A stretch of 64,000 nucleotides of DNA, taken from sequence record MG655267.1; one strand, written 5' to 3'. This document shows positions 4,789 to 51,526 of this stretch, piece after piece (position 1 is the stretch's first letter; each line of letters starts with the position of its first letter). The notes below the pieces were generated by a model. The model did not search any database, was not told the DNA's origin, and saw only the letters and a program-made list of their open reading frames with translations. A program made the position numbers and the translations under genes.

Positions 4789-4816
4789 GAGGAGGGGCAG
4801 CCCTCCTCTTATGCCG
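4789..4816 (+). terminator. Hairpin + TTATGCCG gene-end element
   Basis: gaggaggg-gcag-ccctcctc immediately followed by ttatgccg. Confidence 0.7.
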
Positions 4817-4828
4817 TTTGGGGGTAGC

Positions 4829-5053
4829 ATGGCAAAAAAGGAACTCACGATGAAGCGACTTCAGATAGACATCTCTGAACAGGGCTTTAGCAAACTCAAT
4901 GCACTCAAGGTGAAAATGGAAACCACCGCCATGGGTAGCGTTGTCAGCCGCGCCTTATCGATTACCGATCGTTTGTTCACCGCCAAGGAAAAAGGCAGTA
5001 AGATCCTGATCGTGGATAAAGACGGCAACGTCACCGAAATCGAATTACTGTAG
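4829..5053 (+). CDS. Ribbon-helix-helix (CopG/Arc-like) DNA-binding protein
   Basis: An alternating beta strand (RLQIDIS) is followed by two helices (SEQGFSKLNALK; MGSVVSRALSI) and a KILIVDKDG tail, typical of small RHH proteins. Confidence 0.6.
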   Translation: MAKKELTMKRLQIDISEQGFSKLNALKVKMETTAMGSVVSRALSITDRLFTAKEKGSKILIVDKDGNVTEIELL

Positions 5054-5061
5054 AGGTTAAC

Positions 5062-5289
5062 ATGGCTTGGTCTAAACGCCGTGCAAAGAAACGCATTATT
5101 CATCTACGCGGTTTTCATTATCGGGTTGAATCACGCAGTATCGCAATCTGGGAGCAGTATCGCGAATATCATCAGCATCGCCCGCTTGGATCTGGCATTG
5201 GTCTGTTAATGTTACTTGATCCTGAAACTGGTAAACCAATCGGAGCATCCAATGGCCTTAAGCAAAACAAAAATAAAGCGTCGTACTAA
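5062..5289 (+). CDS. Hypothetical protein
   Basis: 75 aa, RBS gagg upstream. Confidence 0.6.
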   Translation: MAWSKRRAKKRIIHLRGFHYRVESRSIAIWEQYREYHQHRPLGSGIGLLMLLDPETGKPIGASNGLKQNKNKASY

Positions 5290-5536
5290 CGCGTACCATA
5301 ACTACAAAACGCTGGTTGAACGCATTAGCTATAAATGCATGATAGCGCACATCGATGCTCAGGGCATCAAGCTTGAAATGAACCGCACGGGTTCGTCAAT
5401 TAAAAGCGAAGACGTCCCTGCTGCAAACGAAGCCCGTCTTGCATTGAAACGTGAAATCGTCCGTCTGCGAAATATCCAGGGCCGGCGTCGTATCGTGAAC
5501 GCCGGTAAGATCAAAGCGGCAATCAGCCAGTATTAA
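5252..5536 (+). CDS. Hypothetical basic protein
   Basis: Likely start is MALSK at 5252 (RBS ggag). The gene is followed by a canonical terminator. Confidence 0.65.
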   Translation: MALSKTKIKRRTNAYHNYKTLVERISYKCMIAHIDAQGIKLEMNRTGSSIKSEDVPAANEARLALKREIVRLRNIQGRRRIVNAGKIKAAISQY

Positions 5537-5539
5537 TAG

Positions 5540-5569
5540 AAGGGGTTTCGGCCCCTTTATTTTTTTTTT
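5540..5569 (+). terminator. Rho-independent terminator
   Basis: aaggggt-ttcg-gcccctt plus a long T run. Confidence 0.8.
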
Positions 5570-5599
5570 GTCTTGAATAGTGAGATTTTTAAGCTGTAT

Positions 5600-5630
5600 A
5601 AAATCTCAGACCTATATGACTGGGGTGATA
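5600..5630 (+). promoter_or_regulatory. Putative phage early promoter, copy 1
   Basis: The 31-bp aaaatctcagacctatatgactggggtgata is identical to 6206-6236. It is intergenic, follows a terminator and precedes an RBS. Confidence 0.65.
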
Positions 5631-5660
5631 GAGTAATCTAAATTAACTTGTGGAGTCGTC

Positions 5661-6191: not shown

Positions 6192-6205
6192 AATATGAGT
6201 TGCAG

Positions 6206-7318: not shown

Positions 7319-7352
7319 TGTAAGCTGTAGTGTATTGGTCACCTCATGACCG

Positions 7353-7385
7353 GAGCTCACCCTAACCGGTGGGCTCTTTTTTTTG
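7353..7385 (+). terminator. Rho-independent terminator
   Basis: gagctcacc-ctaacc-ggtgggctc plus a T run. Confidence 0.75.
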
Positions 7386-7443
7386 TCTTCTTTTTTTTTT
7401 TGTTCGGGGATTATATGTAGTCCATATTAGCTAAGAGGACATT

Positions 7444-11212: not shown

Positions 11213-11265
11213 ATAGACAGGACGATGAATTCAGCATAAGTCATTGTCTGGGTTCATCCACAACA

Positions 11266-11295
11266 GAGGAGGGTTTTCACCCTCCTCTTGTGCCG
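11266..11295 (+). terminator. Hairpin + TTGTGCCG gene-end element
   Basis: gaggaggg-ttttca-ccctcctc then ttgtgccg. The stem arms are identical to those at 4789. Confidence 0.65.
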
Positions 11296-12043: not shown

Positions 12044-12148
12044 TTTTTATTGCTGGATGCGGTAAACCCGCTCCAGCCCTTATGCCGCCTGTAATATCGT
12101 ACATTATTCTACTATCTATTAGAGGAACAAATAATCTTAAATATTTAC

Positions 12149-12162
12149 AAGCCTACATTATC
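12149..12162 (+). promoter_or_regulatory. Putative phage promoter, AA(G/A)CCTAYATTAT motif
   Basis: aagcctacattatc. Near-identical motifs at 17290 and 36056, all in intergenic DNA upstream of a start codon. Confidence 0.5.
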
Positions 12163-12220: not shown

Positions 12221-13765
12221 ATGATGTTTAAGTACACCACCAAATCGACCTCTGAGAAGGTATGGTTAAACACAATCATAGTTGTCAGTCGTCATGGCGA
12301 AGAGATTGTGTTTAACGAAAACAACTTCTTCAAGTCGGAAGAGAAGGACCACAAAGGAACCTTCGACGAACTGAATCTCTATCTCTTGCGTTGCCTGAGT
12401 AACGAGCAACGTGATCGGATGTTTGAGTTCTATAAGCAAATCAGTTATATCCTGAAAACGGAACTGTCGGTCACTAAGGTCCTTCTGCCAAAGTTGCAGC
12501 CTTTGGTTAAAGGGATCTACGACCTGGTTAGCTTAAGTGACCTGAACGTCTTCATGTATGAAAACAAACTGACGCACATCCCGAACAGCGTACTGGATAC
12601 CATCCCGTCCTCGAAAGAGTACCCGACGATGACCACGTATGTGAAAGCGGATTACGTCAAGCTGGTTAACTTGTCGGTGTTGTTGCATCTGATGGCACCG
12701 ATCATTGCGGACTATGTCAGCAAGGTCAGTGAGTCAACCGGCAAGCAGTTTAAAGAACACGCCGCCTTACCGTTACTGGAATACACCAACATCATGTATT
12801 CTGATGAGATGGTCAAGCTGCGTAACTTCGTGACCGCCAACTGCAGTAAAAAGCCAGTGCCGTTATCAGCCACCTTAGAAGGGATGTCAGAAGAGTCGTT
12901 CCCGGATTGGATGCTGGCGTCGGTCATTGCACGTAAGTTGTGTATCAACCATGTACGGCGTGGGGATGAGAACGGGCACCTGGTTGCTGCGGTGTTTGCG
13001 TACATCAACTACAACATCAAACTGGATGGTAAGTTTGGTGGCGGAGTCATGCCAAAGAAAGAGCGTCGGGGTCTGGGAGAAGATGAGCGCGAGAAAGCGG
13101 TCATTGATAACTGGAAGATGAAAGAGGATGTGGACAAGATCGATATCTTAGCCTGTGCTGTTGGCTTTGATGATCCGGTTGCTGCTGCCAAATTCATTGA
13201 GCCTGACATCGATCCAAACATGGTGATCCGTTGCCTGAATGCGATTCCACAAGCCTGGAACTTCAGCATGACTCGTCATCAGAGCATTCTGTTGCAGTGG
13301 GTAGTGGGTGAGCTTCTGCCGCATATCGGTGATACGTATGTGCCGCCGTTGACAGTTGAGTATTACGATTACGATGTCTGTGTGAAGTTGGTCGGGATTG
13401 CACAAGCGGTACTGTGGCATCGGGGTTATCCGAAGCTTGCAGTGTTTGCTGCGACTTATCCGTCTGAAGTGGATGCCGGCGGGATGCCGAATGCCGTGAT
13501 GCCATTAGAACTGAAAGTGATGGCAGAGCTGGAAGCGTATTACGGTAATGTGCGTCTGGGTAAACGTCAGGACAGCAGCGATGGCTTGGTGCATAAAACC
13601 ATCAACACCATGGTTACCTCATTGTTAGAAGATGATTATCAGGTCGTAGGCCCTGATGAATTGTTAGCGTTATCTGGGGTGGTAGATTTCGAACGTCGAA
13701 TCGTCATTCCTGAAAGCCTATATTACGATATTGCTGGCTACATTCGTTTCTTAGCCACTCGTTAA
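12221..13765 (+). CDS. nvRNAP promoter-specificity (sigma-like) subunit, phiKZ gp68-like
   Basis: 514 aa between chmC and picA. Size and synteny match gp68. Confidence 0.7.
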   Translation: MMFKYTTKSTSEKVWLNTIIVVSRHGEEIVFNENNFFKSEEKDHKGTFDELNLYLLRCLSNEQRDRMFEFYKQISYILKTELSVTKVLLPKLQPLVKGIYDLVSLSDLNVFMYENKLTHIPNSVLDTIPSSKEYPTMTTYVKADYVKLVNLSVLLHLMAPIIADYVSKVSESTGKQFKEHAALPLLEYTNIMYSDEMVKLRNFVTANCSKKPVPLSATLEGMSEESFPDWMLASVIARKLCINHVRRGDENGHLVAAVFAYINYNIKLDGKFGGGVMPKKERRGLGEDEREKAVIDNWKMKEDVDKIDILACAVGFDDPVAAAKFIEPDIDPNMVIRCLNAIPQAWNFSMTRHQSILLQWVVGELLPHIGDTYVPPLTVEYYDYDVCVKLVGIAQAVLWHRGYPKLAVFAATYPSEVDAGGMPNAVMPLELKVMAELEAYYGNVRLGKRQDSSDGLVHKTINTMVTSLLEDDYQVVGPDELLALSGVVDFERRIVIPESLYYDIAGYIRFLATR

Positions 13766-16891: not shown

Positions 16892-16925
16892 CGGCATAAG
16901 GAGAGGCTACGGCCTCTCCTCTTTC
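16892..16925. terminator. Bidirectional hairpin between convergent genes
   Basis: cggcataa (TTATGCCG on the minus strand), then ggagaggc-tacg-gcctctcc, then tctttc. Confidence 0.7.
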
Positions 16926-16929: not shown

Positions 16930-17265
16930 TCATTTTTTATTTGAGTTGTAGAGATCTCTAATAGATGACAGAAGTGAACTGTTTTCATCTATTAGAAGAA
17001 TGTCCGTTGTAATGACATCCCATTTAAAGGGATTCATGATGTTGTTGATTCGCATAGTTAACCAATGCATGTGATAAGGAACGCCGTATTCCAGTAGTAG
17101 CATGCGAAAGTCACCACGTTCTTCGTACTGTTCAAGAGGGGTAGGGGGAGTAAACTTAGTTGCATTCGCCCGAAGCAAATCGAGATGATGCACCAGGACC
17201 TGACGAAAGCCGTGATCTTGAAACAGCTTATCGGTCGGGTGTTTGATTTCGTTGCTGACTCGCAT
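16930..17265 (-). CDS. Small conserved protein, possible T4 gp53/LysM-like baseplate wedge protein
   Basis: 111 aa on the minus strand. HWLTMRINNIMNPFKW resembles the gp53 YW.I...N.I.NP..W motif. Confidence 0.55.
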   Translation of the reverse strand: MRVSNEIKHPTDKLFQDHGFRQVLVHHLDLLRANATKFTPPTPLEQYEERGDFRMLLLEYGVPYHMHWLTMRINNIMNPFKWDVITTDILLIDENSSLLSSIRDLYNSNKK

Positions 17266-17289
17266 ATGCGTAAATACCTATACTTGTTT

Positions 17290-17303
17290 AAGCCTATATT
17301 ATC
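17290..17303 (+). promoter_or_regulatory. Putative phage promoter for the nvRNAP beta/beta' operon
   Basis: aagcctatattatc in the 70-bp divergent intergenic gap. Confidence 0.5.
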
Positions 17304-17335
17304 TCTTGGCAGTTAGGTTGATAAAAGGAATCATA

Positions 17336-19447
17336 ATGAGTCATATTACCGAGGCAAGTGAACTCTCTGCAGAGTTGTTAGGCAGTGTGTTATGTTTGAA
17401 CCCAACCGTACATGGCGATAGCAGCCCACGTTCTGCTATGTTCGGAGGTCATGCAGGACAGGCCGTGACAATCGAGGGTAGCACGCCACGTATGTTAAAA
17501 ACCGGGATCGAGTATGAGTACGGTCAACGGACCTTCAAGATTGAAGCGCCGTGTCAGATGCTCGTGATCGGTGTGATTAACCGTTTCGTCACCAACCACG
17601 TTGGTACTGGGGGTGTGAAAGAGAACCCTGAGAAATATGTGATCTATCAGAACTTAAGTGTAAATACGCCTACACCGACGTTCGGCATTCTGTGTATTCC
17701 GACCTATCACACACGCAACCACGCATTAGGGTTTAAGTATGTGATGGACAAGAAAGCAATTAACCGTTTGTACAGTGTTGATGGTAAGGCGTATATCGAA
17801 AAGGGTGTGATCTTTGCCCGTTCCCCTAACTTGACCGAAGGTGGCGATTATAAGTACGGTCGTGAAACCAACGTAGCATTTATGTCATTACCGGAAGTCG
17901 AACAGGACGGAATGGTGGTAACAGAAAGCTTCGCACAAGCCATGGCCTGTACCAAGATCGAAAGCCGTATCGCACAGTGGGGCGATGATCAGGTGTTGTT
18001 GAACCTGTATGGCGACGATGAGAACTACAAAGCGTTTCCGGATATCGGCGATAAGATTCGTGAAGATGGGATGTTGTTTGCGGTACGTAAGATCATGCCA
18101 GGTACTGGCATTGTCAATCTGACCCCAAAAGCCCTTCGTACTTACGATCCGAACTTCGACTATCCGCAGTATGCTGAAGCCGGTGCCACGGTGGTGAACG
18201 TCCAGGTGAACTCGGACCGCATGCGTACAGGACGTACCGATGTGCAGTTCTATGATAAACAAGCTGAACGGTATGAACGTGCAGCGCGTGAGTTCTCCAA
18301 GTCTCTGCGTAAGATCTACGACGACCTCTATCGTACGTATGGTCATGGCATGATTCTGGAACCTGAACTCAACCGGATGGTGACGGATGCCATCTCGGAT
18401 ACCGGCGGTATGGATCGCAAGATGAATAATCAAGGACAGATTATCAGCGTGGACAAAGGCACACAGGTCTATAACAAAGTCCCGATTGGTGACTGGCGTG
18501 TGAAGATCACCTTTGTTAAACGGATTGAAGCCGGCGTGCGCTTTAAGATCACCGATACCCATGGCGGTAAAGGTGTTATCGTAAACGTGATTCCTGACGC
18601 AGATGCCCCGACCGATGATTACGGTAACCGGGCGGATGTGATCATGGATGATGTGTCGATTACCAAACGTATGAACCTGGGCAAGCCAACCGAGCAGTAT
18701 ATCAACGGTGCATCAGTATATGCAGCGAAGATTGCGCGCCAGATGGCAGCCAGCGGGGATCTGGATGGTGCCTGGAATCACCTCATGAGTTATTACCATG
18801 CAGCCGCGTATGAGCAATGGGAAATGATGCAATCACCAACGTACCTGGATAACAAACCAAATCGCGATCATCATGTGCGTTGGGTGTGTGATCATGGTAT
18901 TGAGTTGTTTGCACCAACTGACCGTCGCTACTTCGGGGCCGAGCAGGTACGGCGTATCATGAAGGAGCATGACTTCCCGGTTACACCCGTGACGTATCGT
19001 GCACCCGATGGGCGTATGGTCCGTACGCGTGATCCGGTGGTGATTGCACCGATCTATATCATCCTGCTGGAAAAGATGGGCGAATACTGGGCGTCGTGTG
19101 CGATTCCAAAACTCACACACTTCGGTACACTCTCATCCTTAACACAGGCGGATAAGTTTGCGTTACCGTGGCGTAACACCCCAACCCGTTTCGGTGAGTC
19201 TGAGTTGCGTCTGTTCTTAGCAGCGTGTCGTGGCTATTATGCGAACCGCCTGCAAAGCATGGCGAACACTCCGGCGATGCAGAAGGAAGCTGCATTGATG
19301 TTCTTGCGTCACGATACACCAATGAACATCCCGAACGTGATTGATGAAACGAAGACACCACTGGGGCGTGCACGTCCATTGCAGATGTATAAGCATAACC
19401 AGGGCTGTCGTGGTATTGAGTTTGAAACAACCGTGTTAAATAAATAA
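17336..19447 (+). CDS. Non-virion RNA polymerase beta C-terminal subunit (phiKZ gp71-73-like), uninterrupted
   Basis: The likely start MSHIT has RBS aaagga. Motifs include SSPRSAM, FKITDTHGGKGVI, RADVIMD and TRFGESE. Confidence 0.92.
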   Translation: MSHITEASELSAELLGSVLCLNPTVHGDSSPRSAMFGGHAGQAVTIEGSTPRMLKTGIEYEYGQRTFKIEAPCQMLVIGVINRFVTNHVGTGGVKENPEKYVIYQNLSVNTPTPTFGILCIPTYHTRNHALGFKYVMDKKAINRLYSVDGKAYIEKGVIFARSPNLTEGGDYKYGRETNVAFMSLPEVEQDGMVVTESFAQAMACTKIESRIAQWGDDQVLLNLYGDDENYKAFPDIGDKIREDGMLFAVRKIMPGTGIVNLTPKALRTYDPNFDYPQYAEAGATVVNVQVNSDRMRTGRTDVQFYDKQAERYERAAREFSKSLRKIYDDLYRTYGHGMILEPELNRMVTDAISDTGGMDRKMNNQGQIISVDKGTQVYNKVPIGDWRVKITFVKRIEAGVRFKITDTHGGKGVIVNVIPDADAPTDDYGNRADVIMDDVSITKRMNLGKPTEQYINGASVYAAKIARQMAASGDLDGAWNHLMSYYHAAAYEQWEMMQSPTYLDNKPNRDHHVRWVCDHGIELFAPTDRRYFGAEQVRRIMKEHDFPVTPVTYRAPDGRMVRTRDPVVIAPIYIILLEKMGEYWASCAIPKLTHFGTLSSLTQADKFALPWRNTPTRFGESELRLFLAACRGYYANRLQSMANTPAMQKEAALMFLRHDTPMNIPNVIDETKTPLGRARPLQMYKHNQGCRGIEFETTVLNK

Positions 19448-22987: not shown

Positions 22988-23000
22988 ACTGACTGTGTAA

Positions 23001-23034
23001 AAGACCAGGGGGCTTACTCCTTGGTCTTTTATGC
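23001..23034 (+). terminator. Hairpin + TTATGC element
   Basis: aagaccaggggg-ctta-ctccttggtctt then ttatgc. Confidence 0.65.
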
Positions 23035-23071
23035 TTTCTTTCCTTTTCTTTTTGTTAAGGATACACAGCTT

Positions 23072-27678: not shown

Positions 27679-27889
27679 AGTTAACATCGAGCAGGCCAAT
27701 CGTTATGAGGGGTCTACCGATGATTTGGTCCAGCAAGCTAATGATCGTGGTTTTCTCCAGGGGATTCGTATCACTTCTGGCGAGGACATCGATCCAAGCA
27801 TTTGGACGCCTGAGAAGATCGAAAAGTTGAAAGCTGCACTTCGACATATTCGTGACTCAGAACAACGCATCAAAGGTAGCCAGGGGTAA
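27659..27889 (+). CDS. Hypothetical protein
   Basis: Likely GTG start at 27659 (RBS gaggg). Confidence 0.55.
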   Translation: MDINPTEVNIEQANRYEGSTDDLVQQANDRGFLQGIRITSGEDIDPSIWTPEKIEKLKAALRHIRDSEQRIKGSQG

Positions 27890-27907
27890 CACCCTGGCTT
27901 TATGCCG
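27878..27907 (+). terminator. Hairpin + TTATGCCG element
   Basis: agccaggg-gtaaca-ccctggct then ttatgccg. Confidence 0.7.
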
Positions 27908-29622: not shown

Positions 29623-29656
29623 AGGCAGGGGGACTACTCTCTGCCTTTATTTTTTG
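29623..29656 (+). terminator. Rho-independent terminator
   Basis: aggcagggg-gacta-ctctctgcct plus a T run. Confidence 0.65.
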
Positions 29657-30699: not shown

Positions 30700-30701
30700 A
30701 A

Positions 30702-30740
30702 CGGCATATAGGCCCTCCGTAATGGAGGGCCTTTTATGAC
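30702..30740. terminator. Bidirectional hairpin between convergent genes
   Basis: cggcata, then ggccctcc-gtaat-ggagggcc, then ttttatgac. Confidence 0.7.
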
Positions 30741-30764
30741 ATCTTTTTTTTTTGGTTTACAGCG

Positions 30765-33267: not shown

Positions 33268-33735
33268 TTACTTTTTAGTGGGGTCGACCTGAACCGGGTC
33301 ATTGAGTTTGCTTGCTGCGCCAGCGGCAACCGCGTTAGCATGGGCGCTGTCTGACATGGTCAGAATGGCAGCACCGTGACGTTGCATCGCATCCAGCAAT
33401 TTACTCTGCAGGACGATGTATTGTTCGTGCACACTGAGGAAGTCAGCGATGGTGCTGTCATGCAAGGCATAACCGGTTTTGCCTTGATGCTGCTGCTTGA
33501 TCATCGGCAGTGTTTCATCGATCTCTTTGACTACAGCCAGCGCCGCTTCGATGTGCGAGCTTAACGCAGAGGGGTTTGGCTGAAAGCGAATGATGTTGGT
33601 GTTGACGGCCATGAGGCAAGTGTTGCTCAGCTCATTGCGCAAATTAATCGTATAAGTTGCCGCAGAATCCAGGTACTCCCAGAACTGATCGGGCTGATGG
33701 ACCTCTGGTGCGAGAGGCGGTTCATTGGTTGACAT
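33268..33735 (-). CDS. Conserved hypothetical protein
   Basis: 155-aa helical protein, RBS aagga. First gene of the minus-strand unit. Confidence 0.7.
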   Translation of the reverse strand: MSTNEPPLAPEVHQPDQFWEYLDSAATYTINLRNELSNTCLMAVNTNIIRFQPNPSALSSHIEAALAVVKEIDETLPMIKQQHQGKTGYALHDSTIADFLSVHEQYIVLQSKLLDAMQRHGAAILTMSDSAHANAVAAGAASKLNDPVQVDPTKK

Positions 33736-33827
33736 AACGGGTCCTTGAGGTGATTTATCTTGTGGCTTACATATATTGACACTACTAATGTCAACAATTA
33801 CAACGTTTATACGGAAAAGGCACGGTC

Positions 33828-36055: not shown

Positions 36056-36069
36056 AAACCTACATTATA
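36056..36069 (+). promoter_or_regulatory. Putative phage promoter
   Basis: aaacctacattata, matching the 12149/17290 motif. Confidence 0.45.
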
Positions 36070-37617: not shown

Positions 37618-37646
37618 AGGAGAGCTTCGGCTCTCCTTTTATGCCC
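37618..37646 (+). terminator. Hairpin + TTATGCCC element
   Basis: aggagagc-ttcg-gctctcct then tttatgccc. Confidence 0.7.
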
Positions 37647-42828: not shown

Positions 42829-42868
42829 CAGCATAAGGAGAGGCCTCGCGCCTCTCCTGTTTATGCCG
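42829..42868. terminator. Bidirectional hairpin with TTATG(C)CG-type tails on both strands
   Basis: cagcataa, aggagaggc-ctcgc-gcctctcct, then ttatgccg, between convergent genes. Confidence 0.75.
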
Positions 42869-42878
42869 TCTTTTTTTT

Positions 42879-43382
42879 TTACACTAAAATGCCGTTAAAG
42901 GCCACCGGGTCATTAGCCAGGAATGGATTGTACCGAACCACGGACCCTAATGTGTAATCGTAATAGATGAAATCCAAGCATTGCGCACCCTGGTAGGTAG
43001 TCCATGACTTTGATAGATAACCATTGCGATCTAACGCAACGTAAGCTGGGCGGCTTGACAACGGAGTAAACTTCATCAACACTTGTGGCTGGTTGTTGAG
43101 GTTGTTTGTAAATACAGGCAGGGAAGGATGCGCATGCCTTGCAATGGAGCACAACCAAGAGTCGTAGGTAAACCACTCTTTATACGGCGTGCCGTACATG
43201 TTGTTGGATGTGTTCAATGTAGTATTAACATATTTACCGGCATTGGCGGACATGCTGGTAGTCGCGTTCGCTACCTTCGTATATTTGGCGGCATTGGCCG
43301 CAAGCCACGCCTCGAATTGCGCATAGGTCATCTTAGTACCTATCTGTGGCTGTGACTTACTGCCCATTAACATCTCTAACAT
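42879..43382 (-). CDS. Probable virion accessory protein, MLE(M/L)LM paralog 1
   Basis: 167 aa, clearly homologous to 43395-43904 (NMYGTPY, ARHA.P, LDRNGY, LDFIYYD). Confidence 0.7.
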   Translation of the reverse strand: MLEMLMGSKSQPQIGTKMTYAQFEAWLAANAAKYTKVANATTSMSANAGKYVNTTLNTSNNMYGTPYKEWFTYDSWLCSIARHAHPSLPVFTNNLNNQPQVLMKFTPLSSRPAYVALDRNGYLSKSWTTYQGAQCLDFIYYDYTLGSVVRYNPFLANDPVAFNGILV

Positions 43383-43904: not shown

Positions 43905-44045
43905 AACTCCACCTCAAAATAAAATCCCGTTAGCAAGGGTTCTGGTTCTCTAATACATGACTTATAGGATTTAGCCGGCATAACGGAGCAGGCAACGCCT
44001 ACTCCTGAATCCTGGTGTGAATAACGGTTGGTCGATTGGGGTATT

Positions 44046-45023: not shown

Positions 45024-45132
45024 GCATCATCCTTCTAGAATGAGTACCTTGACGACCTACTCGCGTCATAGCATTCCAGCCGGCATAAGGGAGTGGATAC
45101 CCTGACCGTAGCCAAGGTGTCCACGTGGTGCG

Positions 45133-46854
45133 TCAAGCCGCAGCCATGAAATCGATCTCGATGTGTTTTTCTACCATAAAGTCTTTCAGTAACGTAATGG
45201 TCTCAGGTGCTTTGTACAACTTACGTGCAAGTTCACCGGCATTGTTCATACCACCGGCTGCCAGGTTTACTGCTACCTGACGATACTCCGTATCATCCAA
45301 TCCTTCGATCTGGGTCATCTCAATCCAGGTGGTTTGTTTCCCCACATTCATGATGACCGTACCGGTCGGGTATGCTCCTTCTACGTCGATGTCGTTCGTA
45401 CCTGTTCGCACATAGGACTTGACATTCGGCAGTTCTTTAAACATCGCTTTGCCGTTTAAAGCAACCAGCTCTGTTGGCAGCATGACGATCCAGCCACCCA
45501 GCCCCTGAATGTGATCATCCAGTTCGGTACGCATCTGATCTGATGTAGTACCCCAGATATACCCTTCTTTCATTACATCGTAATGCATCGCCTCAGCGAT
45601 ACGTGTCGGCTGCGATATAAAGTTACGGTAGTCTGACACCCCGCAGAACGTTGGAACCGCTACAGAGAGATCTGAGGTCTTCTCGTCCATCATTTCAACC
45701 ACGATGCAGTCGAAGATGTTATACATCACATATTCGTACTTGTAGTTGCTCTGCATGAACTCATGCCAGTCTGCCCCGTGGTACCCTTCAGCTTCACTGA
45801 ACTTCATCTTGGTCACACCGAGTACTTTCTCAGCGATGTTATCCAGTTTGTAGTTCAGCTCTTTACCGTTCATGGTACGCAGGTAGTAATAGGCTGACAT
45901 CGATTCAGCCCAACGGAACGACGCAGGGGCATTGACGTAAGGCCACTTCTCATAGTTAGCTAATGATGTCTTGGTGACTTCTTTGCCATCATTTTTTACT
46001 TTGTGGGTTTTGCCCTCGTAGTAATAAACGTTACGGTACTCTTGGGGTACCGAGGGATCGCAAATAACGTCAGCAGGGTTGATGCCGGCATTAGTTAATG
46101 TTTGGGTGAGAACCTTGTAGTCGAACTCGAGCACGTTCCAGCCAGTGATGAAATCGGGCATCCACTCATGGGCGCGTTCAAACAGTTTGACAAAGCCATC
46201 TGCAGCACTGTCAACCAACACGAACTCTGGGTTGGTGATGCTGCGTTTGGTTGCCCACTCGCCCAGGTATTTATCCCAGGCCAGTTTCAGCTTCTGATGA
46301 ATACGTTCATCCGCTTCCCCGCCAAAGTAGCGACGGATCACAAAGGTAAAGGTGCGTTCTTTAAAGGTTAAGGATGCCATGATCGGCTCACCCTTATACC
46401 GCTCGTCTACCATTTCGGTTTCGATATCGAACACACTGATTTTGTACGGAGTAAAGGTATCAGGAAACTTCGCTTCGTACATCGCTTTGACAATCGAGGA
46501 GGGTTCGATGTCAGCGCCATACACGTACGGACTGCGACATACCCGACGCAGTTGCTGATCGGTGGCACCTTTTCCCAACATCTTTGAGATGTGGTTAGGA
46601 AGATCCCACTGCGGGCAACTGAACTTCTGCAGCTTGGACAGCTCTTCGTAATCTTTCTTATCCTGGTGATTGCGGTACGCCGGTTTGGTGAGGTAGTAAT
46701 CACGCTTCATGTCTTTGATGATGCGGGTGTGGGGTTTGCTGTTCCCGTTCTCGTCAATCACATTCTCTTTCACGAAGATGATGTCTGATTTGCCGCGCAG
46801 AGAAAGGGTATAGATCGCGTGCTTGCATTCGAAACGAAGGTTATTGCTGCTCAT
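45133..46854 (-). CDS. Split B-family DNA polymerase, 3'-5' exonuclease subunit (phiKZ gp82-like)
   Basis: ExoI VFDIETE, ExoII GWNVLEFD, ExoIII YNIFDC, and PolB motif A DIDVEGAYP near the C-terminus. Confidence 0.9.
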   Translation of the reverse strand: MSSNNLRFECKHAIYTLSLRGKSDIIFVKENVIDENGNSKPHTRIIKDMKRDYYLTKPAYRNHQDKKDYEELSKLQKFSCPQWDLPNHISKMLGKGATDQQLRRVCRSPYVYGADIEPSSIVKAMYEAKFPDTFTPYKISVFDIETEMVDERYKGEPIMASLTFKERTFTFVIRRYFGGEADERIHQKLKLAWDKYLGEWATKRSITNPEFVLVDSAADGFVKLFERAHEWMPDFITGWNVLEFDYKVLTQTLTNAGINPADVICDPSVPQEYRNVYYYEGKTHKVKNDGKEVTKTSLANYEKWPYVNAPASFRWAESMSAYYYLRTMNGKELNYKLDNIAEKVLGVTKMKFSEAEGYHGADWHEFMQSNYKYEYVMYNIFDCIVVEMMDEKTSDLSVAVPTFCGVSDYRNFISQPTRIAEAMHYDVMKEGYIWGTTSDQMRTELDDHIQGLGGWIVMLPTELVALNGKAMFKELPNVKSYVRTGTNDIDVEGAYPTGTVIMNVGKQTTWIEMTQIEGLDDTEYRQVAVNLAAGGMNNAGELARKLYKAPETITLLKDFMVEKHIEIDFMAAA

Positions 46855-46954
46855 GATGAATGATAATCCTATGTCAAAACACTACAAAGTGCACCAGTGT
46901 TTAATACGCGTTATAACATCAGGCGTGCAACTACATTTATACAAAGGAGATCAC

Positions 46955-48217
46955 ATGATCCTATCTAGCGGTCTGGAAGCGATTAGCTTTCAAAAGAATC
47001 CGCTCTTTTACAAACAGCTGGTTGTCGAATTCGGCCGTCTGATGGAACTTGCTAAAGCCAATGGTAAGAAGCGCTTGACCGAAGAGATGATGGCGCAGTC
47101 TAACCTGGCAAAAATCACCATGGCGAACACCGGCATCAAAGTCTCGCCTGGGGTGGATACCCGCATGCAGTGTAATGCGTACGTTATGATTCCGAGCATC
47201 AACTCCTATCACGTCTTCAATGACCGCATGCGTCAGATCTTCTCAGGGTATGCCGAATCGTTTGAGCAGTTTCGTAAAGCCAACGATGTGTTGATTGGGT
47301 TGGTTGATCTGCAGAACTCCAAAGTGGGCGGGGTCTTCTCGACTATTGATCACCGCATCTGTCTGTCGTACGATATGATGACCGACTATGACATGACCCC
47401 GGGTGAAGTCGCAGCCATTTACATGCATGAAGTCGGCCATGCCTTTACCTTCCTGGAGATGCTGCATTATACCGCTACCACCAACCTGGTGCTGACCGCT
47501 GGCATTGAAGCGATCATCAAATCAGAAACTTCTCGTAAGCATGTCATCTTAAGTGATATCGAAAACTCCTTAGGGATTAAGATTGATAATAAAGATGAAC
47601 TGGTCGCTTACGACAAGTATGAAGATTATGCTGTCACGATCCTGTCGAAGTACAATCGCACCTTAGCTGCGGCCCTGGGTTCACCGGCACACGATGAATC
47701 GATGTCTGAGCAGATGGCAGATATGTTTGCCACCCGACATGGCGCGGGATTGGATCTGGCGCGGGGATTGTCCCGTATTCACAAATATTACAATTCACCG
47801 AAGTTTAAGTTTGCCCGCTATCTGGAGATCTTTGTCGGCATCCTGCAGACCATGGGCTTGTCCCTGGTGTTCGATGTGTTGGGAGTAATCGTTGTCCTGA
47901 CTGTCGGTAACTTCTTTGGTGGGACGTATGACCGGGCGAAAGACCGTTTCATCCGCATGCGTAACGAAATCGTGGTCGGCCTGAAAGATGAAGAGATCAG
48001 TGCAGCTGACCGCAAACTCTTGATCAGTCATATCGCCGAGCTGGACAAGATCATTGCCCAGGCCAAAAACGAAAGCTCCTTTGTCGAGCAGTTGTCTCTG
48101 GTGGTGCGCGCCAGCCAGCGTGAGCGTTATGCCAGCAAGTACCTGCAAAAGGATCTTGAAGCCCTTCTTAATAATCCGCTCTATGTCAGTGCGGCCAAAC
48201 TGAAAACATTGCAATAA
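46955..48217 (+). CDS. Virion head protein with zincin HExxH motif and hydrophobic segment (phiKZ gp83 position)
   Basis: Start MILSSGLEA (RBS aaggag) carries a G-x-E protease site. Also HEVGH...EQMADMFA and a hydrophobic stretch IFVGILQTMGLSLVFDVLGVIVVLTV. Confidence 0.75.
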   Translation: MILSSGLEAISFQKNPLFYKQLVVEFGRLMELAKANGKKRLTEEMMAQSNLAKITMANTGIKVSPGVDTRMQCNAYVMIPSINSYHVFNDRMRQIFSGYAESFEQFRKANDVLIGLVDLQNSKVGGVFSTIDHRICLSYDMMTDYDMTPGEVAAIYMHEVGHAFTFLEMLHYTATTNLVLTAGIEAIIKSETSRKHVILSDIENSLGIKIDNKDELVAYDKYEDYAVTILSKYNRTLAAALGSPAHDESMSEQMADMFATRHGAGLDLARGLSRIHKYYNSPKFKFARYLEIFVGILQTMGLSLVFDVLGVIVVLTVGNFFGGTYDRAKDRFIRMRNEIVVGLKDEEISAADRKLLISHIAELDKIIAQAKNESSFVEQLSLVVRASQRERYASKYLQKDLEALLNNPLYVSAAKLKTLQ

Positions 48218-48230
48218 GGATTCATCAGAA

Positions 48231-48737
48231 ATGATTATTGACGTAGCAGAATTAAAGAAACAGATCGTGTCGGTGCGTTCTATTGCAGAGATCCCAACTA
48301 CCCTGCGTACTAAACTGATTGAAACCGGTCTGGCCCGTGCGGTAGCTTATGGTGTTGATCTGCCAAAAGAGCTGGTCGGCAACCCGGTCTCCTATTTCGC
48401 CAGCAACGCCACTGATGCTAAGCAGGCACTGGCGGTGATCAACGAAACCAACGTGATCAACATCTCCCGTATCCTGTCACTCGCCACCATCATCTGGCAG
48501 GCACGCTACAACATGGTTTATCTGCCAGCCACTCGCGAGTCCATGGAGTTGACTCATCAGGTGTTGTCCGATCAACGCGAATGGTTGTTCGATGCAGAGC
48601 AGCAGGATTTCCTGTCAGCGACCATTGGCGACGGTACTGTGCAAGACAGCCTGAAGCTGGCCCTGTTAAACTTCACCTGCCCGGCTGTGATCAACCCTAA
48701 CCAGGTAGCACCAGTCACCACCGCTGACGAGGAGTAA
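48231..48737 (+). CDS. Probable virion structural protein
   Basis: 168 aa in the structural operon, RBS aagga. Confidence 0.7.
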   Translation: MIIDVAELKKQIVSVRSIAEIPTTLRTKLIETGLARAVAYGVDLPKELVGNPVSYFASNATDAKQALAVINETNVINISRILSLATIIWQARYNMVYLPATRESMELTHQVLSDQREWLFDAEQQDFLSATIGDGTVQDSLKLALLNFTCPAVINPNQVAPVTTADEE

Positions 48738-48739
48738 TC

Positions 48740-50206
48740 ATGTCTATTGATCTGATCGCTTCCTTTATCGACGATTCGGGCAATGTCCCGATGACGGCGC
48801 TGACCGTGGTAAAGAAAGAGAACGACGAAGCCAACGCACAACTGCCGAAACAGGTAGCGATGCTGAAAGCCTCTAACGAACGTATCGTTGAACTTCAGTC
48901 TGTGATTGAACGTGTGCGCCGTGAAGGCATGAGCCGTGAAGTCGCCGCGATCGTTGCCTCGATTGCACCCGAAGCGTTGCCGGTTGGCTACGGTGCTGAA
49001 GGTTTCACTGAGCAACCCTCAAAGCTTGGGATGGCTGCTGGTCTGGAATCGATCACCGCCTACGTGATTGATGGTATCAAACGTCTGATTGCGTTCCTGA
49101 TCGATAAGGCCAAGAAAGCCGCTGCCTTTATTGTGGATCAGTATCGTCGTCTGACGGGCATTGCTCCCACTGCGTACAAGATCGATCGTCGTGCTGCGTA
49201 CCTTACGGCGATGTCTGCCCGGTTTGCTCAGCACTTCGGTACGGATCTGGCGACCCTGTTAGAGCAGGATATCAATGCCGGCTTTACCAGTATCGAAAGC
49301 ACCCGCATGGTATTGAGCGGTATGTTTGCTGATGCGGAAGTGCTGCAGGCGGATCTGTCTAAATATGGCAAGCACATCAATGTCATGTCCAAACAGATCG
49401 AAGCGTTACTGGCAGATGCGCCAGCACGTGTGGTGCGGGTCAATGCGATTGTTAATGATGTCACGGTATCGCGCAATGGCAGCAACGATCGCAGTGCAGA
49501 GATCCTGCGTCTGATCGACACCCGTAACCTCGATGCCCTGGTCAGTACGTTGCGCAGCGTCAGTAAGTTACTGGTCAGCAGCCCGATGTACAAATCCACT
49601 GGCACCGGTAAAGACGGCAAAATCAAACAGACTATCCTTGAGCAGTTAAACAGCGATGGTTTCCGTGAGATGATGTCCGGCCTTTCCATGGCTGCTAATG
49701 CTGGCATGACCCACACCATGGACATGACCGATGCCTCGGCGATCATTCGTTCACGTAATCTGGCTGAGGCTGTTAAAGAGCTCACCAATTACGAAGAAGT
49801 GAAGAAGCGTTCATTGGATGACCTCAAGTCTGCTACTGGTTCGATCAACAGCAACAAATATGTGCAGGCCGCTGAACAGTCACCGGGTGATGACCCGACC
49901 ATGGCAGCTGTGGTGCAGTTTAACCAATACTGGGATGATGTCACGACCGCCGTAAAAGTGGCACAGGACATCACCACCGCCTACGCGGAGACGGTATTCA
50001 AACTGCAGCTGTTCTCGGTGCGTTGTCAAGACCTGGCGCTGGTACAGTGGTCCGCTAACCCAGCCAATGCCGGTCTGGCAGAAGCCAATGCGGCGACTGA
50101 ACGTCTGCAGGCGGTGGTCAAGCAGTATCTGGATAAGGTCGTGAAGAACACCACGGGCTTGAAAGGTGCGCTGGATGACCTCGGCAAACTGGTCAATCAA
50201 CTGTAA
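48740..50206 (+). CDS. Virion inner-head protein (protease-processed)
   Basis: 488 aa. AGLESI propeptide cleavage-type motif followed by a VIDGIKRLI helix. Confidence 0.75.
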   Translation: MSIDLIASFIDDSGNVPMTALTVVKKENDEANAQLPKQVAMLKASNERIVELQSVIERVRREGMSREVAAIVASIAPEALPVGYGAEGFTEQPSKLGMAAGLESITAYVIDGIKRLIAFLIDKAKKAAAFIVDQYRRLTGIAPTAYKIDRRAAYLTAMSARFAQHFGTDLATLLEQDINAGFTSIESTRMVLSGMFADAEVLQADLSKYGKHINVMSKQIEALLADAPARVVRVNAIVNDVTVSRNGSNDRSAEILRLIDTRNLDALVSTLRSVSKLLVSSPMYKSTGTGKDGKIKQTILEQLNSDGFREMMSGLSMAANAGMTHTMDMTDASAIIRSRNLAEAVKELTNYEEVKKRSLDDLKSATGSINSNKYVQAAEQSPGDDPTMAAVVQFNQYWDDVTTAVKVAQDITTAYAETVFKLQLFSVRCQDLALVQWSANPANAGLAEANAATERLQAVVKQYLDKVVKNTTGLKGALDDLGKLVNQL

Positions 50207-50215
50207 GGAAATCGC

Positions 50216-51472
50216 ATGGAATCCACATTACTTCAAACGATCAATGAAACCACGGAGTTGTGTGACTCTTTGATTTCGTTGTCACAACGTCTTGAGATGT
50301 TGGGTCCCATTGCTGCTGAGTCTGTTAACTTCGCAAAGATCCATGAATCGATTAACCTGAAGGTGGCGAAGATTGCTGCTTCGATGGAGTCGATTGAAGC
50401 TAACGGCATCAACCAGGAGGCAGTGTTAGAAATCAATACTGCCATGCCTGGTATCATTCCCAACACCATCCCTCTTAATGGATACACCAAAGCCCGCAGT
50501 CAGATGAATGTGGGGTTTGCCTTAGAGTCGTTGGAGTCAGGTAAAGCAGCAATGATCTCCGGTTCAGTAACAGGGATCGTGGCCGTGATCGTCAAACTGT
50601 TTCGTTGGGTGGTCATGACCATCAAGCAGTATGTCAAATCACGCCGTGATGCGAACCGTCTCGGTGTCTCTGTGACACAAGCGCTGCAACGTGCGGGAAC
50701 GATCAACGAATACCTGTTAGAGCAGTTGGCGAAAACCCCTGAAGCCAAAGCCGCCCGTCCGGGCTTTGAATGGTTGGTATCGATCTGGCGTCCGCAGGCT
50801 GGGATCTTTAAGTTCAATGAAGATGCACTGGTGCAGTGGTGGCCAGAACTCGTCAATGAACTGGAGTACGAATACAACCAGATCAGCAAGGCGTTTGAAA
50901 CACTGCGTAGCGGTGGGTCGTTTGTCCCGAACATTGCGAAAGCACATCAGTCGCCCTCCATGAAGCGTTTCTTTGAAGCCTTACCGCAAGGGACGGATCG
51001 TCAAGGGAACATCGTTGAGGTAGAGCTGGCTAAGAAGCAGTTCCAGGAGAACCCACAGCGTGCGTTGTTCCAACTGGCTGAGCGTCTGCGCTACATGATC
51101 ATGCGCGAGCCTAAATCAAAAGGTACTGACTTTGGGCAAGAGCTGATTTCAGTAGGTCGCAGTATTGAAGCCTACACCAATGTGGATCGTCTGGTGTTTG
51201 ATCAGCTGAATACCTACGATACCAACAATCGATTAGGGAAACTGGAAGAGGCGTTTGGTGCGTTGTATAAGCAAGTACAAGCCACACGCTACACTGCAGA
51301 CAAAGCCCTGGTTGATGAGTTCGTGGGTTACCTGAACCGTTATTCAGAAAAGCTTAACTGTTTCGTGCAACTGATCACCATTGTGAGTTACCTGGATAGC
51401 TGTAGTTTCCAGATCCTTGACAATGTCTCCAAAGCCACCATGAAGTACGTTGATATTGCTGCCAGTAATTAA
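50216..51472 (+). CDS. Virion inner-head protein (protease-processed)
   Basis: 418 aa, ASMESI/FALESLE sites. The N-terminal architecture parallels the previous gene. Confidence 0.75.
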   Translation: MESTLLQTINETTELCDSLISLSQRLEMLGPIAAESVNFAKIHESINLKVAKIAASMESIEANGINQEAVLEINTAMPGIIPNTIPLNGYTKARSQMNVGFALESLESGKAAMISGSVTGIVAVIVKLFRWVVMTIKQYVKSRRDANRLGVSVTQALQRAGTINEYLLEQLAKTPEAKAARPGFEWLVSIWRPQAGIFKFNEDALVQWWPELVNELEYEYNQISKAFETLRSGGSFVPNIAKAHQSPSMKRFFEALPQGTDRQGNIVEVELAKKQFQENPQRALFQLAERLRYMIMREPKSKGTDFGQELISVGRSIEAYTNVDRLVFDQLNTYDTNNRLGKLEEAFGALYKQVQATRYTADKALVDEFVGYLNRYSEKLNCFVQLITIVSYLDSCSFQILDNVSKATMKYVDIAASN

Positions 51473-51474
51473 AT

Positions 51475-51526
51475 CGGCATAAAGGCCTGGCCTTCCTTGC
51501 GGAGGGCCAGAGCCTTGCTTATGCCG
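51475..51526. terminator. Bidirectional hairpin flanked by CGGCATAA...TTATGCCG
   Basis: cggcataa (51475-82), ctggcc-ttccttgcggag-ggccag, ttatgccg (51519-26), between convergent genes. Confidence 0.75.

What the first reader, a model, noticed from the sequence alone, without database searches (positions are those of the whole stretch)
4789..51526. Recurrent strand-matched 'hairpin + TTATGCCG' gene-end element, a non-canonical terminator/processing signal
Seen in sequence: GC-rich hairpins at gene ends are followed by TTATGCCG or a close variant instead of a U-tract. Plus-strand tails are at 4809-16, 11288-95 (ttgtgccg), 12080-87, 23029-34, 27900-07, 37639-46, 42861-68 and 51519-26. Minus-strand tails (read CGGCATA(A) on +) are at 16892-99, 30702-08, 43976-83, 45081-88 (weak stem) and 51475-82. 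The motif nearly always lies 3' of the stem on the strand of the gene that just ended, and on both sides at convergent junctions 42829-42868 and 51475-51526. Canonical T-tract terminators (5540, 7353, 29623) occur mainly after accessory genes. Established: phiKZ nvRNAP late promoters centre on TATG. Inference: this is a sequence-specific signal for a phage RNAP (termination or re-initiation), an RNA cleavage site, or a tag for ChmC or nuclear mRNA export.
Basis: partly seen in the sequence, partly recalled or inferred. Interest (0 to 1): 0.7.

Follow-up and report, generated by a model that had tools for sequence, protein, structure and literature searches.

The report
Phage terminator hairpins with TTATGCCG tail
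The window comes from a giant Erwinia phage whose genes end in an RNA hairpin followed by the fixed word TTATGCCG instead of a run of U. This stop signal has already been mapped in the related Pseudomonas phages phiKZ and 201phi2-1, so it is real and widespread but not new in kind.

Summary
The window is Erwinia jumbo phage vB_EamM_Bosolaphorus (Agricanvirus), record positions 186001-250000. All 9 TTATGCCG copies (1.7 expected) sit directly 3' of a strong GC hairpin. Genome-wide, motif discovery on hairpin tails recovers the same 8-nt word at 72 sites. It lies on the strand of the gene that has just ended. It occurs at all 17 convergent junctions that have a spacer, and never with a hairpin at the 18 divergent junctions. 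It is therefore a gene-end signal, not a promoter. G·U pairs and UUCG/GNRA loops show that the hairpin works as RNA. Stems change between relatives while the tail stays fixed. The element matches the published phiKZ terminator motif (stem-loop + TTATKYYGT, 61 mapped 3' ends) and motif A of 201phi2-1. It is a new member of a known kind. I also find the tail in phages of Salmonella, Klebsiella, Xanthomonas, Ralstonia and Pseudomonas. It is absent from other nucleus-forming phages that infect the same hosts (Wellington, SPN3US), which use T-tracts. How it is read is unknown. The re-initiation, cleavage and export-tag ideas are unsupported.

The parts
4788..4816 (+). Terminator after gp231 (stop 4780): 9-bp hairpin, then TTATGCCG at 4809-4816.
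   Evidence: AH06 ortholog keeps the hairpin with a changed apex and has tail TTATGCTG.
11265..11295 (+). Terminator after gp243 (stop 11212): hairpin, then the variant tail TTGTGCCG.
   Evidence: The variant tail is identical in AH06.
12052..12087 (+). Terminator after gp245 (stop 12043): hairpin with GNRA-type loop, then TTATGCCG at 12080-87. An early-promoter-like word follows at 12153.
   Evidence: In AH06 the stem changes and the tail is unchanged.
16892..16921 (-). Terminator after gp249 (- strand, stop 16930) at a convergent junction with gp248. The tail is on the - strand only. On the + strand the same hairpin is followed by a T-rich stretch.
   Evidence: Identical in AH06.
22995..23060 (+). 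Long hairpin after the gp252 helicase, with a T-rich tail. Best read as a T-rich-tail terminator, not a motif site.
   Evidence: TATGC is not kept in AH06.
27878..27907 (+). Terminator overlapping the stop of gp262 (27889): hairpin, then TTATGCCG at 27900-07, 20 nt before the gp263 start.
   Evidence: AH06 keeps TTATGCC with a 1-nt shift.
30702..30753 (.). Bidirectional terminator between gp267 (+) and gp268 (-). Core hairpin 30710-30732. The - strand tail is TATGCCG at 30702-08. On the + strand TTTATGAC is followed by a T10 run at 30744-53.
   Evidence: AH06 shows a compensatory C-G to T-A change in the stem with the tail unchanged.
37618..37646 (+). Terminator after gp276 (stop 37612): C(UUCG)G hairpin, then TTATGCCC, 15 nt before the gp277 start.
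   Evidence: In AH06 an A-U pair becomes G.U and the tail is unchanged.
42829..42880 (.). Bidirectional terminator between gp284 (+) and gp285 (-). Core hairpin 42836-42858. The + tail is TTATGCCG at 42861-68, followed by T10 at 42871-80. The - tail is TTATGCTG at 42829-36. The two tails pair.
   Evidence: In AH06 the stem apex is replaced and the + strand tail is kept; the - strand tail differs at one base.
43976..44005 (-). Terminator after gp287 (- strand, stop 44046): hairpin, then TTATGCCG at 43976-83.
   Evidence: BLAST finds no AH06 match for this spacer, yet AH06 has a different hairpin with the same tail at the corresponding position.
45081..45124 (-). Terminator after the gp288 DNA polymerase (- strand, stop 45133): 32-nt imperfect hairpin 45093-45124, a 4-nt spacer, then TTATGCCG at 45081-88.
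   Evidence: AH06 ortholog has the same architecture.
51475..51526 (.). Bidirectional terminator between gp292 (+) and gp293 (-). TTATGCCG is on both strands (51519-26 on +, 51475-82 on -). The two copies pair into one long hairpin. The + tail overlaps the stop codon of gp293.
   Evidence: pEa_SNUABM_48 and SA002 have unrelated stems with TTATGC-type tails at the same junction.
564..594 (+). Hairpin after gp225 (RNAP subunit, stop 557) with the variant tail TTATTACCG. Possible member.
5539..5570 (+). Canonical T-tract terminator after gp234, listed for contrast.
7352..7401 (+). Canonical T-tract terminator after gp238, listed for contrast.
29623..29656 (+). Hairpin after gp265 with tail TTAT followed by a T run, listed for contrast.

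Best explanation
These are the transcription terminators of the phage's own multisubunit RNA polymerases. They are the Agricanvirus version of the phiKZ-type terminator.

Shown. The nascent RNA can fold into a stable GC-rich hairpin, often closed by a UUCG or GNRA loop. The next eight bases are TTATGCCG instead of a U-tract. The element sits just after stop codons on the strand of the finished gene. At convergent gene pairs one palindrome carries a tail on each side and can serve both directions.

Inferred mechanism. Release happens while the tail is still in the RNA:DNA hybrid. UUAU gives the weak hybrid next to the hairpin. The conserved GCCG, a pyrimidine followed by G about 7-8 nt after the stem, holds the polymerase there long enough for the hairpin to act, doing the job of the U-tract. 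The tail is read by a phage component, most simply the polymerase itself. Genes that look early and genes that are clearly late both end this way, so both phage polymerases probably respond to it.
For: Enrichment and hairpin association.
- Searches give the counts and the hairpin association.
- Expectation-maximisation motif discovery on the tails of 151 intergenic hairpin strands returns the word with column shares T82 T97 A96 T97 G89 C85 C70 G69 %. It places 72 sites, most starting within 2 nt of the stem end.

Position.
- 61 of 76 hairpin+tail elements lie directly 3' of a same-strand gene: 41 co-directional and 20 convergent. None sits where only a downstream gene could use it.
- 17 of 17 convergent spacers carry it, 13 on both strands. 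No divergent spacer has a hairpin+tail.

RNA-level action.
- Stems contain 15 internal G.U pairs against 0 A.C.
- Loops include 6 UUCG and 9 GNRA, and none of their complements.
- The sense strand is on average 2.6 kcal/mol more stable than the antisense strand.

Selection.
- In AH06 (about 80% identical) and in pEa_SNUABM_48 and SA002 (about 65% identical), stems change, partly by compensatory substitutions or wholesale replacement, while the tail persists.

Same kind as a mapped terminator.
- phiKZ: 61 terminator regions defined by ONT-cappable-seq 3' ends share a stem-loop followed by TTATKYYGT, and bidirectional ones lie between convergent genes (PMC10914365).
- 201phi2-1 motif A (n=59) resembles it, and eight 201phi2-1 terminators reduced read-through in a reporter assay (PMC11512511).
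- My matrix finds the tail after hairpins in a phiKZ-species genome: 5 sites against 0.13 expected.

Phage-encoded reader.
- The tail is enriched after hairpins in phages of Erwinia, Salmonella, Klebsiella, Xanthomonas, Pseudomonas and Ralstonia, each with P < 1e-6.
- It is absent in Wellington (also E. amylovora), SPN3US (also Salmonella), PCH45, Moabite and AR9, which use T-tracts.

Co-transcriptional action.
- At bidirectional sites the finished RNA is predicted to bury the tail in a duplex.
Against: - No RNA-end data exist for this phage or its genus, so termination here is inferred by homology of the signal.
- 3' ends mapped in phiKZ cannot by themselves separate termination from processing.
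- The pause/weak-hybrid mechanism is my inference from general knowledge of bacterial RNAP, not a tested property of these enzymes.
- Variant tails such as TTATACCG, TTATTCCG and TTGTGCCG show that some positions are tolerant.
- Stem polarity is opposite to the published phiKZ motif: the 5' arm is 78% purine.
- Temporal classes of the genes are guessed from function and from a promoter-like word, not measured.
- My G.U and stability comparisons are partly biased, because the hairpin finder allowed G.U but not A.C pairs.
Confidence: 0.75

Rival explanations
1. Factor-dependent termination. A phage-encoded protein, not the polymerase itself, recognises the tail on the nascent RNA or on the non-template DNA strand and triggers release at the hairpin.
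For: An 8-nt specific word is more than intrinsic termination normally needs. Presence of the tail follows phage lineage rather than host, which fits any phage-encoded reader. About half of the phiKZ and 201phi2-1 mapped terminators were not predicted to be intrinsic.
Against: No candidate factor was identified. Eight 201phi2-1 terminators worked in uninfected P. chlororaphis, so no phage protein was present; the text read here does not say which motifs those eight carried. At bidirectional sites the tail is predicted to pair once transcribed, which leaves little time for an RNA-binding factor.
Confidence: 0.12
2. RNA 3'-end processing and stabilisation. Transcription reads through. A nuclease then cuts at or after the tail, and the hairpin protects the new 3' end.
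For: 3'-end mapping in relatives cannot tell processing from termination. Hairpins with UUCG/GNRA loops are good blocks to exonucleases.
Against: A host nuclease does not explain why phages of the same host differ in tail. At bidirectional sites the tail is predicted to be double-stranded, a poor substrate for single-strand endonucleases. Promoter-like words lie 20-35 nt downstream of several tails, which fits separate transcription units.
Confidence: 0.07
3. Terminator coupled to a start site. The TATG inside the tail is also used by the non-virion RNAP as a late-promoter core, so transcription restarts at the G right after each terminator.
For: In phiKZ the late-promoter core is TATG at -3 to +1, read on the non-template strand by a pocket of the beta-like subunit GP123 (PMC12809450). 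Bosolaphorus gp2 is a GP123 homolog, E = 2.8e-44. Many tails lie 15-140 nt before the next start codon.
Against: The tail is present at 17 of 17 convergent junctions, where a start would only make antisense RNA. It is absent from all 18 divergent junctions. Hairpin-free TATG words upstream of genes at divergent junctions are followed by T rather than CCG. Variant tails lack the G. phiKZ TSS and TTS motifs were reported as separate sets. Only 3 of the 7 listed pocket residues are identical in gp2.
Confidence: 0.05
4. A DNA-level repeat, such as a REP- or MITE-like mobile palindrome or a replication, recombination or packaging signal, that merely tends to sit between genes.
For: Several bidirectional copies have near-identical stems. 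The phage encodes SbcCD-like proteins.
Against: Most stems differ in sequence and only the tail is constant. G.U pairs and RNA tetraloops are strand-specific. Orientation follows the gene strand. The sites are orthologous between diverged genomes.
Confidence: 0.01

Closest known systems
phiKZ terminator motif (Putzeys et al. 2024, PMC10914365): stem-loop followed by TTATKYYGT at 61 ONT-cappable-seq-defined termination regions
   Same: A GC-rich stem-loop is followed at once by TTAT. The next four positions fit K-Y-Y-G: G, C, C, G at 61-89%. Sites are intergenic and in sense orientation at gene ends. Bidirectional copies lie between convergent genes. The host phage has two phiKZ-like multisubunit RNAPs. 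My Bosolaphorus-derived matrix recovers the tail in a phiKZ-species genome.
   Different: Stem polarity is reversed: here the 5' arm is purine-rich (78%), whereas the published motif has a C-rich 5' arm. Genome GC is about 50% against 37%. No transcript ends have been mapped for this genus.
Motif A terminators of Pseudomonas phage 201phi2-1 (PMC11512511)
   Same: The authors describe it as strongly resembling the phiKZ motif. It co-occurs with a second motif that lengthens the hairpin, much as paired tails lengthen the hairpin at convergent junctions here.
   Different: The sequence of motif A was not available to me (the supplements are not held), so the likeness rests on the authors' statement.
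Canonical intrinsic (Rho-independent) terminators of bacteria and of other chimalliviruses (SPN3US, Wellington, PCH45, Moabite)
   Same: A GC-rich hairpin at the gene end. The first tail bases are U-rich (UUAU). The phage also has a few true T-tract terminators (5539, 7352).
   Different: There is no U-tract. A specific 8-nt word takes its place, and the T-tract scanner misses every motif element. The tail type follows phage lineage, not host.
Sequence-specific (class II) termination/pause signals of single-subunit T7-like RNAPs (recalled from my own knowledge, not tested here)
   Same: A short conserved word, rather than a U-tract, is needed for the polymerase to stop.
   Different: Those signals act without a hairpin and on an unrelated single-subunit enzyme. 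Here a hairpin is always present and the enzymes are multisubunit. No sequence comparison was made.

Membership tests
phiKZ-type chimallivirus terminator motif | GC-rich stem-loop directly upstream of the tail | tested here: met
   Stems are 7-12 bp, dG about -10 to -27 kcal/mol.
phiKZ-type chimallivirus terminator motif | TTAT immediately after the stem | tested here: met
   column shares T82 T97 A96 T97 %, with the start within 2 nt of the stem end at most sites.
phiKZ-type chimallivirus terminator motif | The next positions fit K-Y-Y-G(-T) of the published motif | tested here: met
   G 84-89%, C 84-85%, C 64-70%, G 61-69%. The following T is only weakly enriched (39-61% T over the next three positions).
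phiKZ-type chimallivirus terminator motif | Lies at gene 3' ends in sense orientation; bidirectional copies lie between convergent genes | tested here: met
phiKZ-type chimallivirus terminator motif | Published stem composition (C-rich 5' arm, G-rich 3' arm) | tested here: not met
   the 5' arm is 78% purine. Only two aligned copies have the phiKZ polarity. Stems vary freely between relatives, so I treat this as a lineage difference, not as exclusion.
phiKZ-type chimallivirus terminator motif | The same tail is detectable after hairpins in a phiKZ-species genome with a matrix built here | tested here: met
   KTN4 has 5 sites against 0.13 expected (P = 2e-7). One search shows the sites.
phiKZ-type chimallivirus terminator motif | Transcript 3' ends map at the element | not testable with these tools
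   No RNA-end data for Agricanvirus were found.
Canonical intrinsic terminator | U-tract (at least 5 T in 8) starting 0-2 nt after the stem | tested here: not met
   none of the motif elements is listed. Only 5539, 7352, 22995 and 29623 are.
Canonical intrinsic terminator | GC-rich hairpin at a gene end | tested here: met
nvRNAP late promoter (TATG at -3..+1, PMC12809450) | Placed where a downstream gene needs a start, including divergent spacers | tested here: not met
   hairpin+tail at 0 of 18 divergent and 17 of 17 convergent spacers.
nvRNAP late promoter (TATG at -3..+1, PMC12809450) | The TATG-binding pocket of the GP123 homolog is conserved in this phage | tested here: inconclusive
   gp2 aligns to PHIKZ123. 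By my reading of that alignment, 3 of the 7 listed residues are identical, 1 is conservative and 3 differ.
REP/MITE-like repeated palindrome | Copies share the whole sequence and are gained or lost between close relatives | tested here: not met
   only the tail is constant; the positions are orthologous in diverged genomes.

The most novel reading that the evidence does not exclude
The tail is read during elongation by the same non-template-strand TATG pocket of the beta-like RNAP subunit that recognises late promoters in phiKZ. One pocket would then mark both starts (TATG followed by T-type context, no hairpin) and stops (hairpin + T-TATG-CCG). It might also hand the polymerase on for local recycling. 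This would be a sequence-specific stop signal built into the core of a multisubunit RNAP, shared by chimalliviruses of at least seven host genera.
Probability: 0.1. Interest if true: 0.8.

Novelty: new member of a known kind. Interest (0 to 1): 0.4.

Why it matters
Nucleus-forming jumbo phages transcribe with their own sigma-less multisubunit polymerases. Their promoters have been studied structurally, but their stop signals have only been catalogued. This finding adds three things.

- The phiKZ terminator tail is a precise 8-nt word, not just a 'TTAT region'.
- It is kept in phages of Erwinia, Salmonella, Klebsiella, Xanthomonas, Ralstonia and Pseudomonas across a wide range of GC content.
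- It is replaced by ordinary T-tracts in sister lineages that infect the same bacteria.

That pattern points to a phage-encoded reader and gives a clean comparative handle on how these polymerases terminate.

In practice it allows transcription units to be predicted from sequence alone in Agricanvirus genomes, for which a MEME search by the describing authors gave nothing usable. It also flags a few start codons that were probably mis-called on the ATG inside the tail.

Tried and rejected
- **Covariance model.** MAFFT anchored the 38 copies on the tail but not in structural register. RNAalifold returned no pairs, so no model was built. I used a hairpin finder plus a position matrix with binomial controls instead.
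- **Rfam.** No family matched anywhere in the window.
- **Supplementary tables.** The phiKZ and 201phi2-1 tables, which would place the mapped 3' ends relative to the tail, are not held.
- **Full-text search for TTATGCCG.** It gave only a PCR primer from phage Miami.
- **Gene calling.** A greedy longest-ORF gene call mis-called several genes. I replaced it with a codon-usage-scored call. That call still misses a few small genes, so borderline cases were checked by eye against the GenBank tables.
- **Promoter reading.** Considered and rejected on the convergent/divergent test.
- **Mobile-repeat reading.** Rejected on stem diversity and orthology.
- **GP123 pocket conservation.** The check was inconclusive.

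Full report
**Origin of the window**

The window is 100% identical to Erwinia phage vB_EamM_Bosolaphorus (MG655267.1, Agricanvirus, 272,228 bp), record positions 186001-250000 on the + strand. It is a phiKZ-like jumbo phage with several split RNA polymerase beta/beta' genes. I read the rest of the public record in five further chunks. I analysed the chunks separately and did not join or save them as one sequence.

- TTATGCCG occurs 9 times in the window against 1.73 expected, and no shuffle reaches 9.
- TATGCCG occurs 16 times against 6.45. Ten of those follow hairpins, so the excess is the hairpin-associated set.
- Printing each listed site in the orientation of the motif shows a GC-rich hairpin ending 0-4 nt before the word in every case.
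- Over the whole genome there are 42 TTATGCCG and 65 TTATGCC. About 45 of the 65 are intergenic and directly follow a hairpin of -10 to -27 kcal/mol.
- I ran the test in reverse. I collected the 151 strong hairpin strands lying outside my predicted genes and ran an expectation-maximisation motif search on the 18 nt around each stem end. It returned the same word with column shares T82 T97 A96 T97 G89 C85 C70 G69 %. It placed 72 sites, most starting within 2 nt of the stem end.
- Among hairpins of dG <= -12, 51 of 143 intergenic strands carry a TTAT-type tail, against 3 of 90 inside genes.

- 23029-34 is doubtful. It lies inside a long stem, is followed by a T-rich tail, and the TATGC is not kept in AH06.
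- The stem at 45081 is not weak; the predicted fold of the 55-nt region is -21 kcal/mol.
- Two more hairpins have variant tails: 564-594 and 62619-62654.

**Stop signal or start signal?**

The annotation gives 18 convergent and 18 divergent strand switches. One convergent pair has no spacer.

- All 17 convergent junctions that have a spacer carry the tail word next to the hairpin, 13 of them on both strands.
- No divergent spacer has a hairpin+tail. The loose pattern matches there are start codons or hairpin-free TATG words.
- Of 76 hairpin+tail elements, 61 lie directly 3' of a gene on the same strand: 41 with a co-directional gene following and 20 at convergent junctions.
- None lies where only a downstream gene could use it. 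Most of the remaining 15 are artefacts of my gene calls or the opposite faces of bidirectional elements.

The word therefore belongs to gene ends, not gene starts.

**RNA or DNA?**

- In 36 unidirectional elements the stems contain 15 internal G.U pairs and no A.C pair.
- Loops include 6 UUCG and 9 GNRA, and none of their complements.
- The gene-strand RNA is on average 2.6 kcal/mol more stable than the antisense RNA.
- My hairpin finder accepted G.U but not A.C pairs, so part of this asymmetry is built in. The loop counts do not come from that pairing rule, although the energy cut-off gives special tetraloops a small bonus.

**Conservation**

- Phage AH06 (same genus, about 80% identity) keeps the elements of the window. 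Stems change by compensatory or wobble substitutions, or have their apex replaced, while the tail is almost untouched.
- At 43976 the spacer has diverged so far that BLAST finds nothing. AH06 still has a different hairpin followed by TTATGCCG there.
- In pEa_SNUABM_48 and Salmonella phage SA002 (about 65% identity), the junction orthologous to 51475-51526 has unrelated stems with TTATGC-type tails on both sides.

**What is already known**

- Putzeys et al. (PMC10914365) mapped 133 termination regions in phiKZ by ONT-cappable-seq. [quoted passage not shown] They also report six bidirectional terminators between convergent genes.
- The 201phi2-1 study (PMC11512511) found a motif A (n=59) that 'strongly resembles' it. 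A second motif lengthens the hairpin. Eight terminators were active in a reporter assay in the uninfected host.
- The tail here fits the published degenerate word at every position.
- The paper describing this phage family ran MEME and FIMO but did not follow the motifs up. The element has therefore not been described for Agricanvirus.
- One difference stands out. The published stems have a C-rich 5' arm, whereas here the 5' arm is 78% purine.

**Distribution**

I scored hairpin tails with the Bosolaphorus matrix, using each locus's own background.

| Phage sample | Host | Hairpin tails scoring >= 8 bits | Expected |
|---|---|---|---|
| Window (Bosolaphorus) | Erwinia | 11 | 0.34 |
| AH06 (two loci) | Erwinia | 10 and 6 | 0.19 and 0.12 |
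| pEa_SNUABM_48 | Erwinia | 5 | 0.17 |
| SA002 | Salmonella | 6 | 0.21 |
| Eowyn | Klebsiella | 6 | 0.23 |
| RTH11 | Xanthomonas | 8 | 0.23 |
| RP12 | Ralstonia | 10 | 0.36 |
| Psa21 | Pseudomonas | 5 | 0.10 |
| KTN4 (phiKZ species) | Pseudomonas | 5 | 0.13 |

- Each of these samples has P < 1e-6.
- EL, pTD1 and PhiEaH1 are marginal.
- SPN3US, Wellington, PCH45 and AR9 have none, and Moabite has one. Where I listed or counted the tails (SPN3US, Wellington, PCH45, Moabite), the hairpins are followed by ordinary T-tracts.
- Wellington and Bosolaphorus both infect E. amylovora, and SPN3US and SA002 both infect Salmonella. The tail type follows the phage lineage, not the host. This argues that a phage-encoded component reads it.
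- Each phage was sampled over only 28-42 kb, so 'absent' means absent from that sample.

**Mechanism**

- Shown: a hairpin plus an 8-nt word, at gene ends, strand-matched, with RNA-level stem selection and a lineage-specific tail.
- Taken from relatives: transcript 3' ends map at such sites.
- Inferred: release is co-transcriptional. At bidirectional junctions the two tails are complementary and pair in the finished RNA. A reader that needs single-stranded RNA after the fact would find the tail buried there.
- My working model, from general knowledge of bacterial RNAP, is as follows. UUAU provides the weak hybrid next to the hairpin. The conserved C-C-G, 6-8 nt after the stem, provides a pyrimidine-then-G pause that substitutes for the U-tract. 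This is untested for these enzymes.
- Genes that are clearly late (capsid, sheath, other virion proteins) end with the tail. So do many small + strand genes in regions that carry an early-promoter-like word. Both phage polymerases therefore probably respond, but the temporal classes were not measured.

**The TATG link**

- The phiKZ nvRNAP structure paper (PMC12809450) shows that the late-promoter core TATG (-3 to +1) is held on the non-template strand in a pocket of the beta-like subunit GP123. GP123 is part of the core enzyme.
- Bosolaphorus gp2 is a GP123 homolog. Of the seven residues the paper lists, three are identical, one is conservative and three differ, so pocket conservation is inconclusive.
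- The tail contains TATG. A shared reader for starts and stops is therefore conceivable.
- Against it: the junction test excludes a simple promoter role, variant tails without the G exist, and the hairpin-free TATG words upstream of genes at divergent junctions are followed by T rather than CCG.
- I keep this as the low-probability novel reading.

**Verdict**

The terminator reading is supported. The signal is a new member of a known kind. Its sharper definition and wider, lineage-bound distribution are the new elements. The molecular reader of the tail remains open.

Noticed in passing
window 3971-3979, 12153-12161, 13718-13726, 17294-17302, 36060-36068; genome-wide: A 9-nt word (search pattern CTA[CT]ATTA[CT]) occurs 23 times in the genome, all on the + strand. 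Nearly all copies are intergenic or at the very end of a gene, upstream of the next gene. One lies before the nvRNAP genes gp250-251. Several lie 20-35 nt after a terminator tail. It is a candidate early (virion RNAP) promoter.
   Followed up: partly
window 30744-30753, 42871-42880, 5560-5569, 7377-7401; genome-wide: Runs of 7 or more T are rare and strand-biased: 19 on + and 5 on -. Fifteen of the 19 lie within 45 nt 3' of an intergenic hairpin, 14 of them at a fixed offset of 10-15 nt and only one directly at the stem. At bidirectional junctions the run follows the lengthened hairpin. Elsewhere no extended pairing explains the spacing.
   Followed up: partly
window 1-60000: Sigma-70-type promoter matches are fewer than in shuffles: 20 against 27.0, 15 against 24.2, and 7 against 20.1 +/- 3.8. 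This fits a phage that does not use the host polymerase.
   Followed up: no
window 4811-5053; L003:46564, L004:245 and L004:3188 (record 46564, 50045, 52988): The ATG inside the tail opens the longest ORF of the next gene at several sites. Three GenBank start codons (gp51, gp57, gp62) are placed on it, although a better ribosome-binding site and ATG lie 15-25 nt downstream for at least two of them. These starts are probably mis-called.
   Followed up: partly
L004:29326-29371 (record 79126-79171): One promoter-like word is followed 2 nt later by a hairpin + TTATGCC, just before gp104. This is a terminator inside a probable 5' leader. It resembles the premature-termination sites described for phiKZ.
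   Followed up: no
divergent spacers genome-wide, e.g. window 17265-17336, 33735-33828, 46854-46955: Hairpin-free TATG words, usually followed by T, lie about 30-60 nt upstream of start codons of several genes at divergent junctions, including the tail sheath and other virion genes. They are possible late-promoter cores like the phiKZ TATG. No statistics were done.
   Followed up: no
genome-wide; L006:24934-24969 and window 30699-30732: Stem polarity is purine-rich in the 5' arm (GGAGG-like, resembling a ribosome-binding site). This is the reverse of phiKZ, RTH11, SA002 and pEa_SNUABM_48. Two of the 38 aligned copies show the phiKZ polarity.
   Followed up: partly
window 51519-51526: The reverse complement of the tail ends in TAA. 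At this junction the + strand tail supplies the stop codon of the convergent gene gp293, so coding and terminator sequence overlap.
   Followed up: no
L003:1001-2689: gp2, annotated 'putative RNA polymerase beta subunit', matches the solved phiKZ nvRNAP subunit PHIKZ123 (7ogp chain E, E = 2.8e-44).
   Followed up: partly
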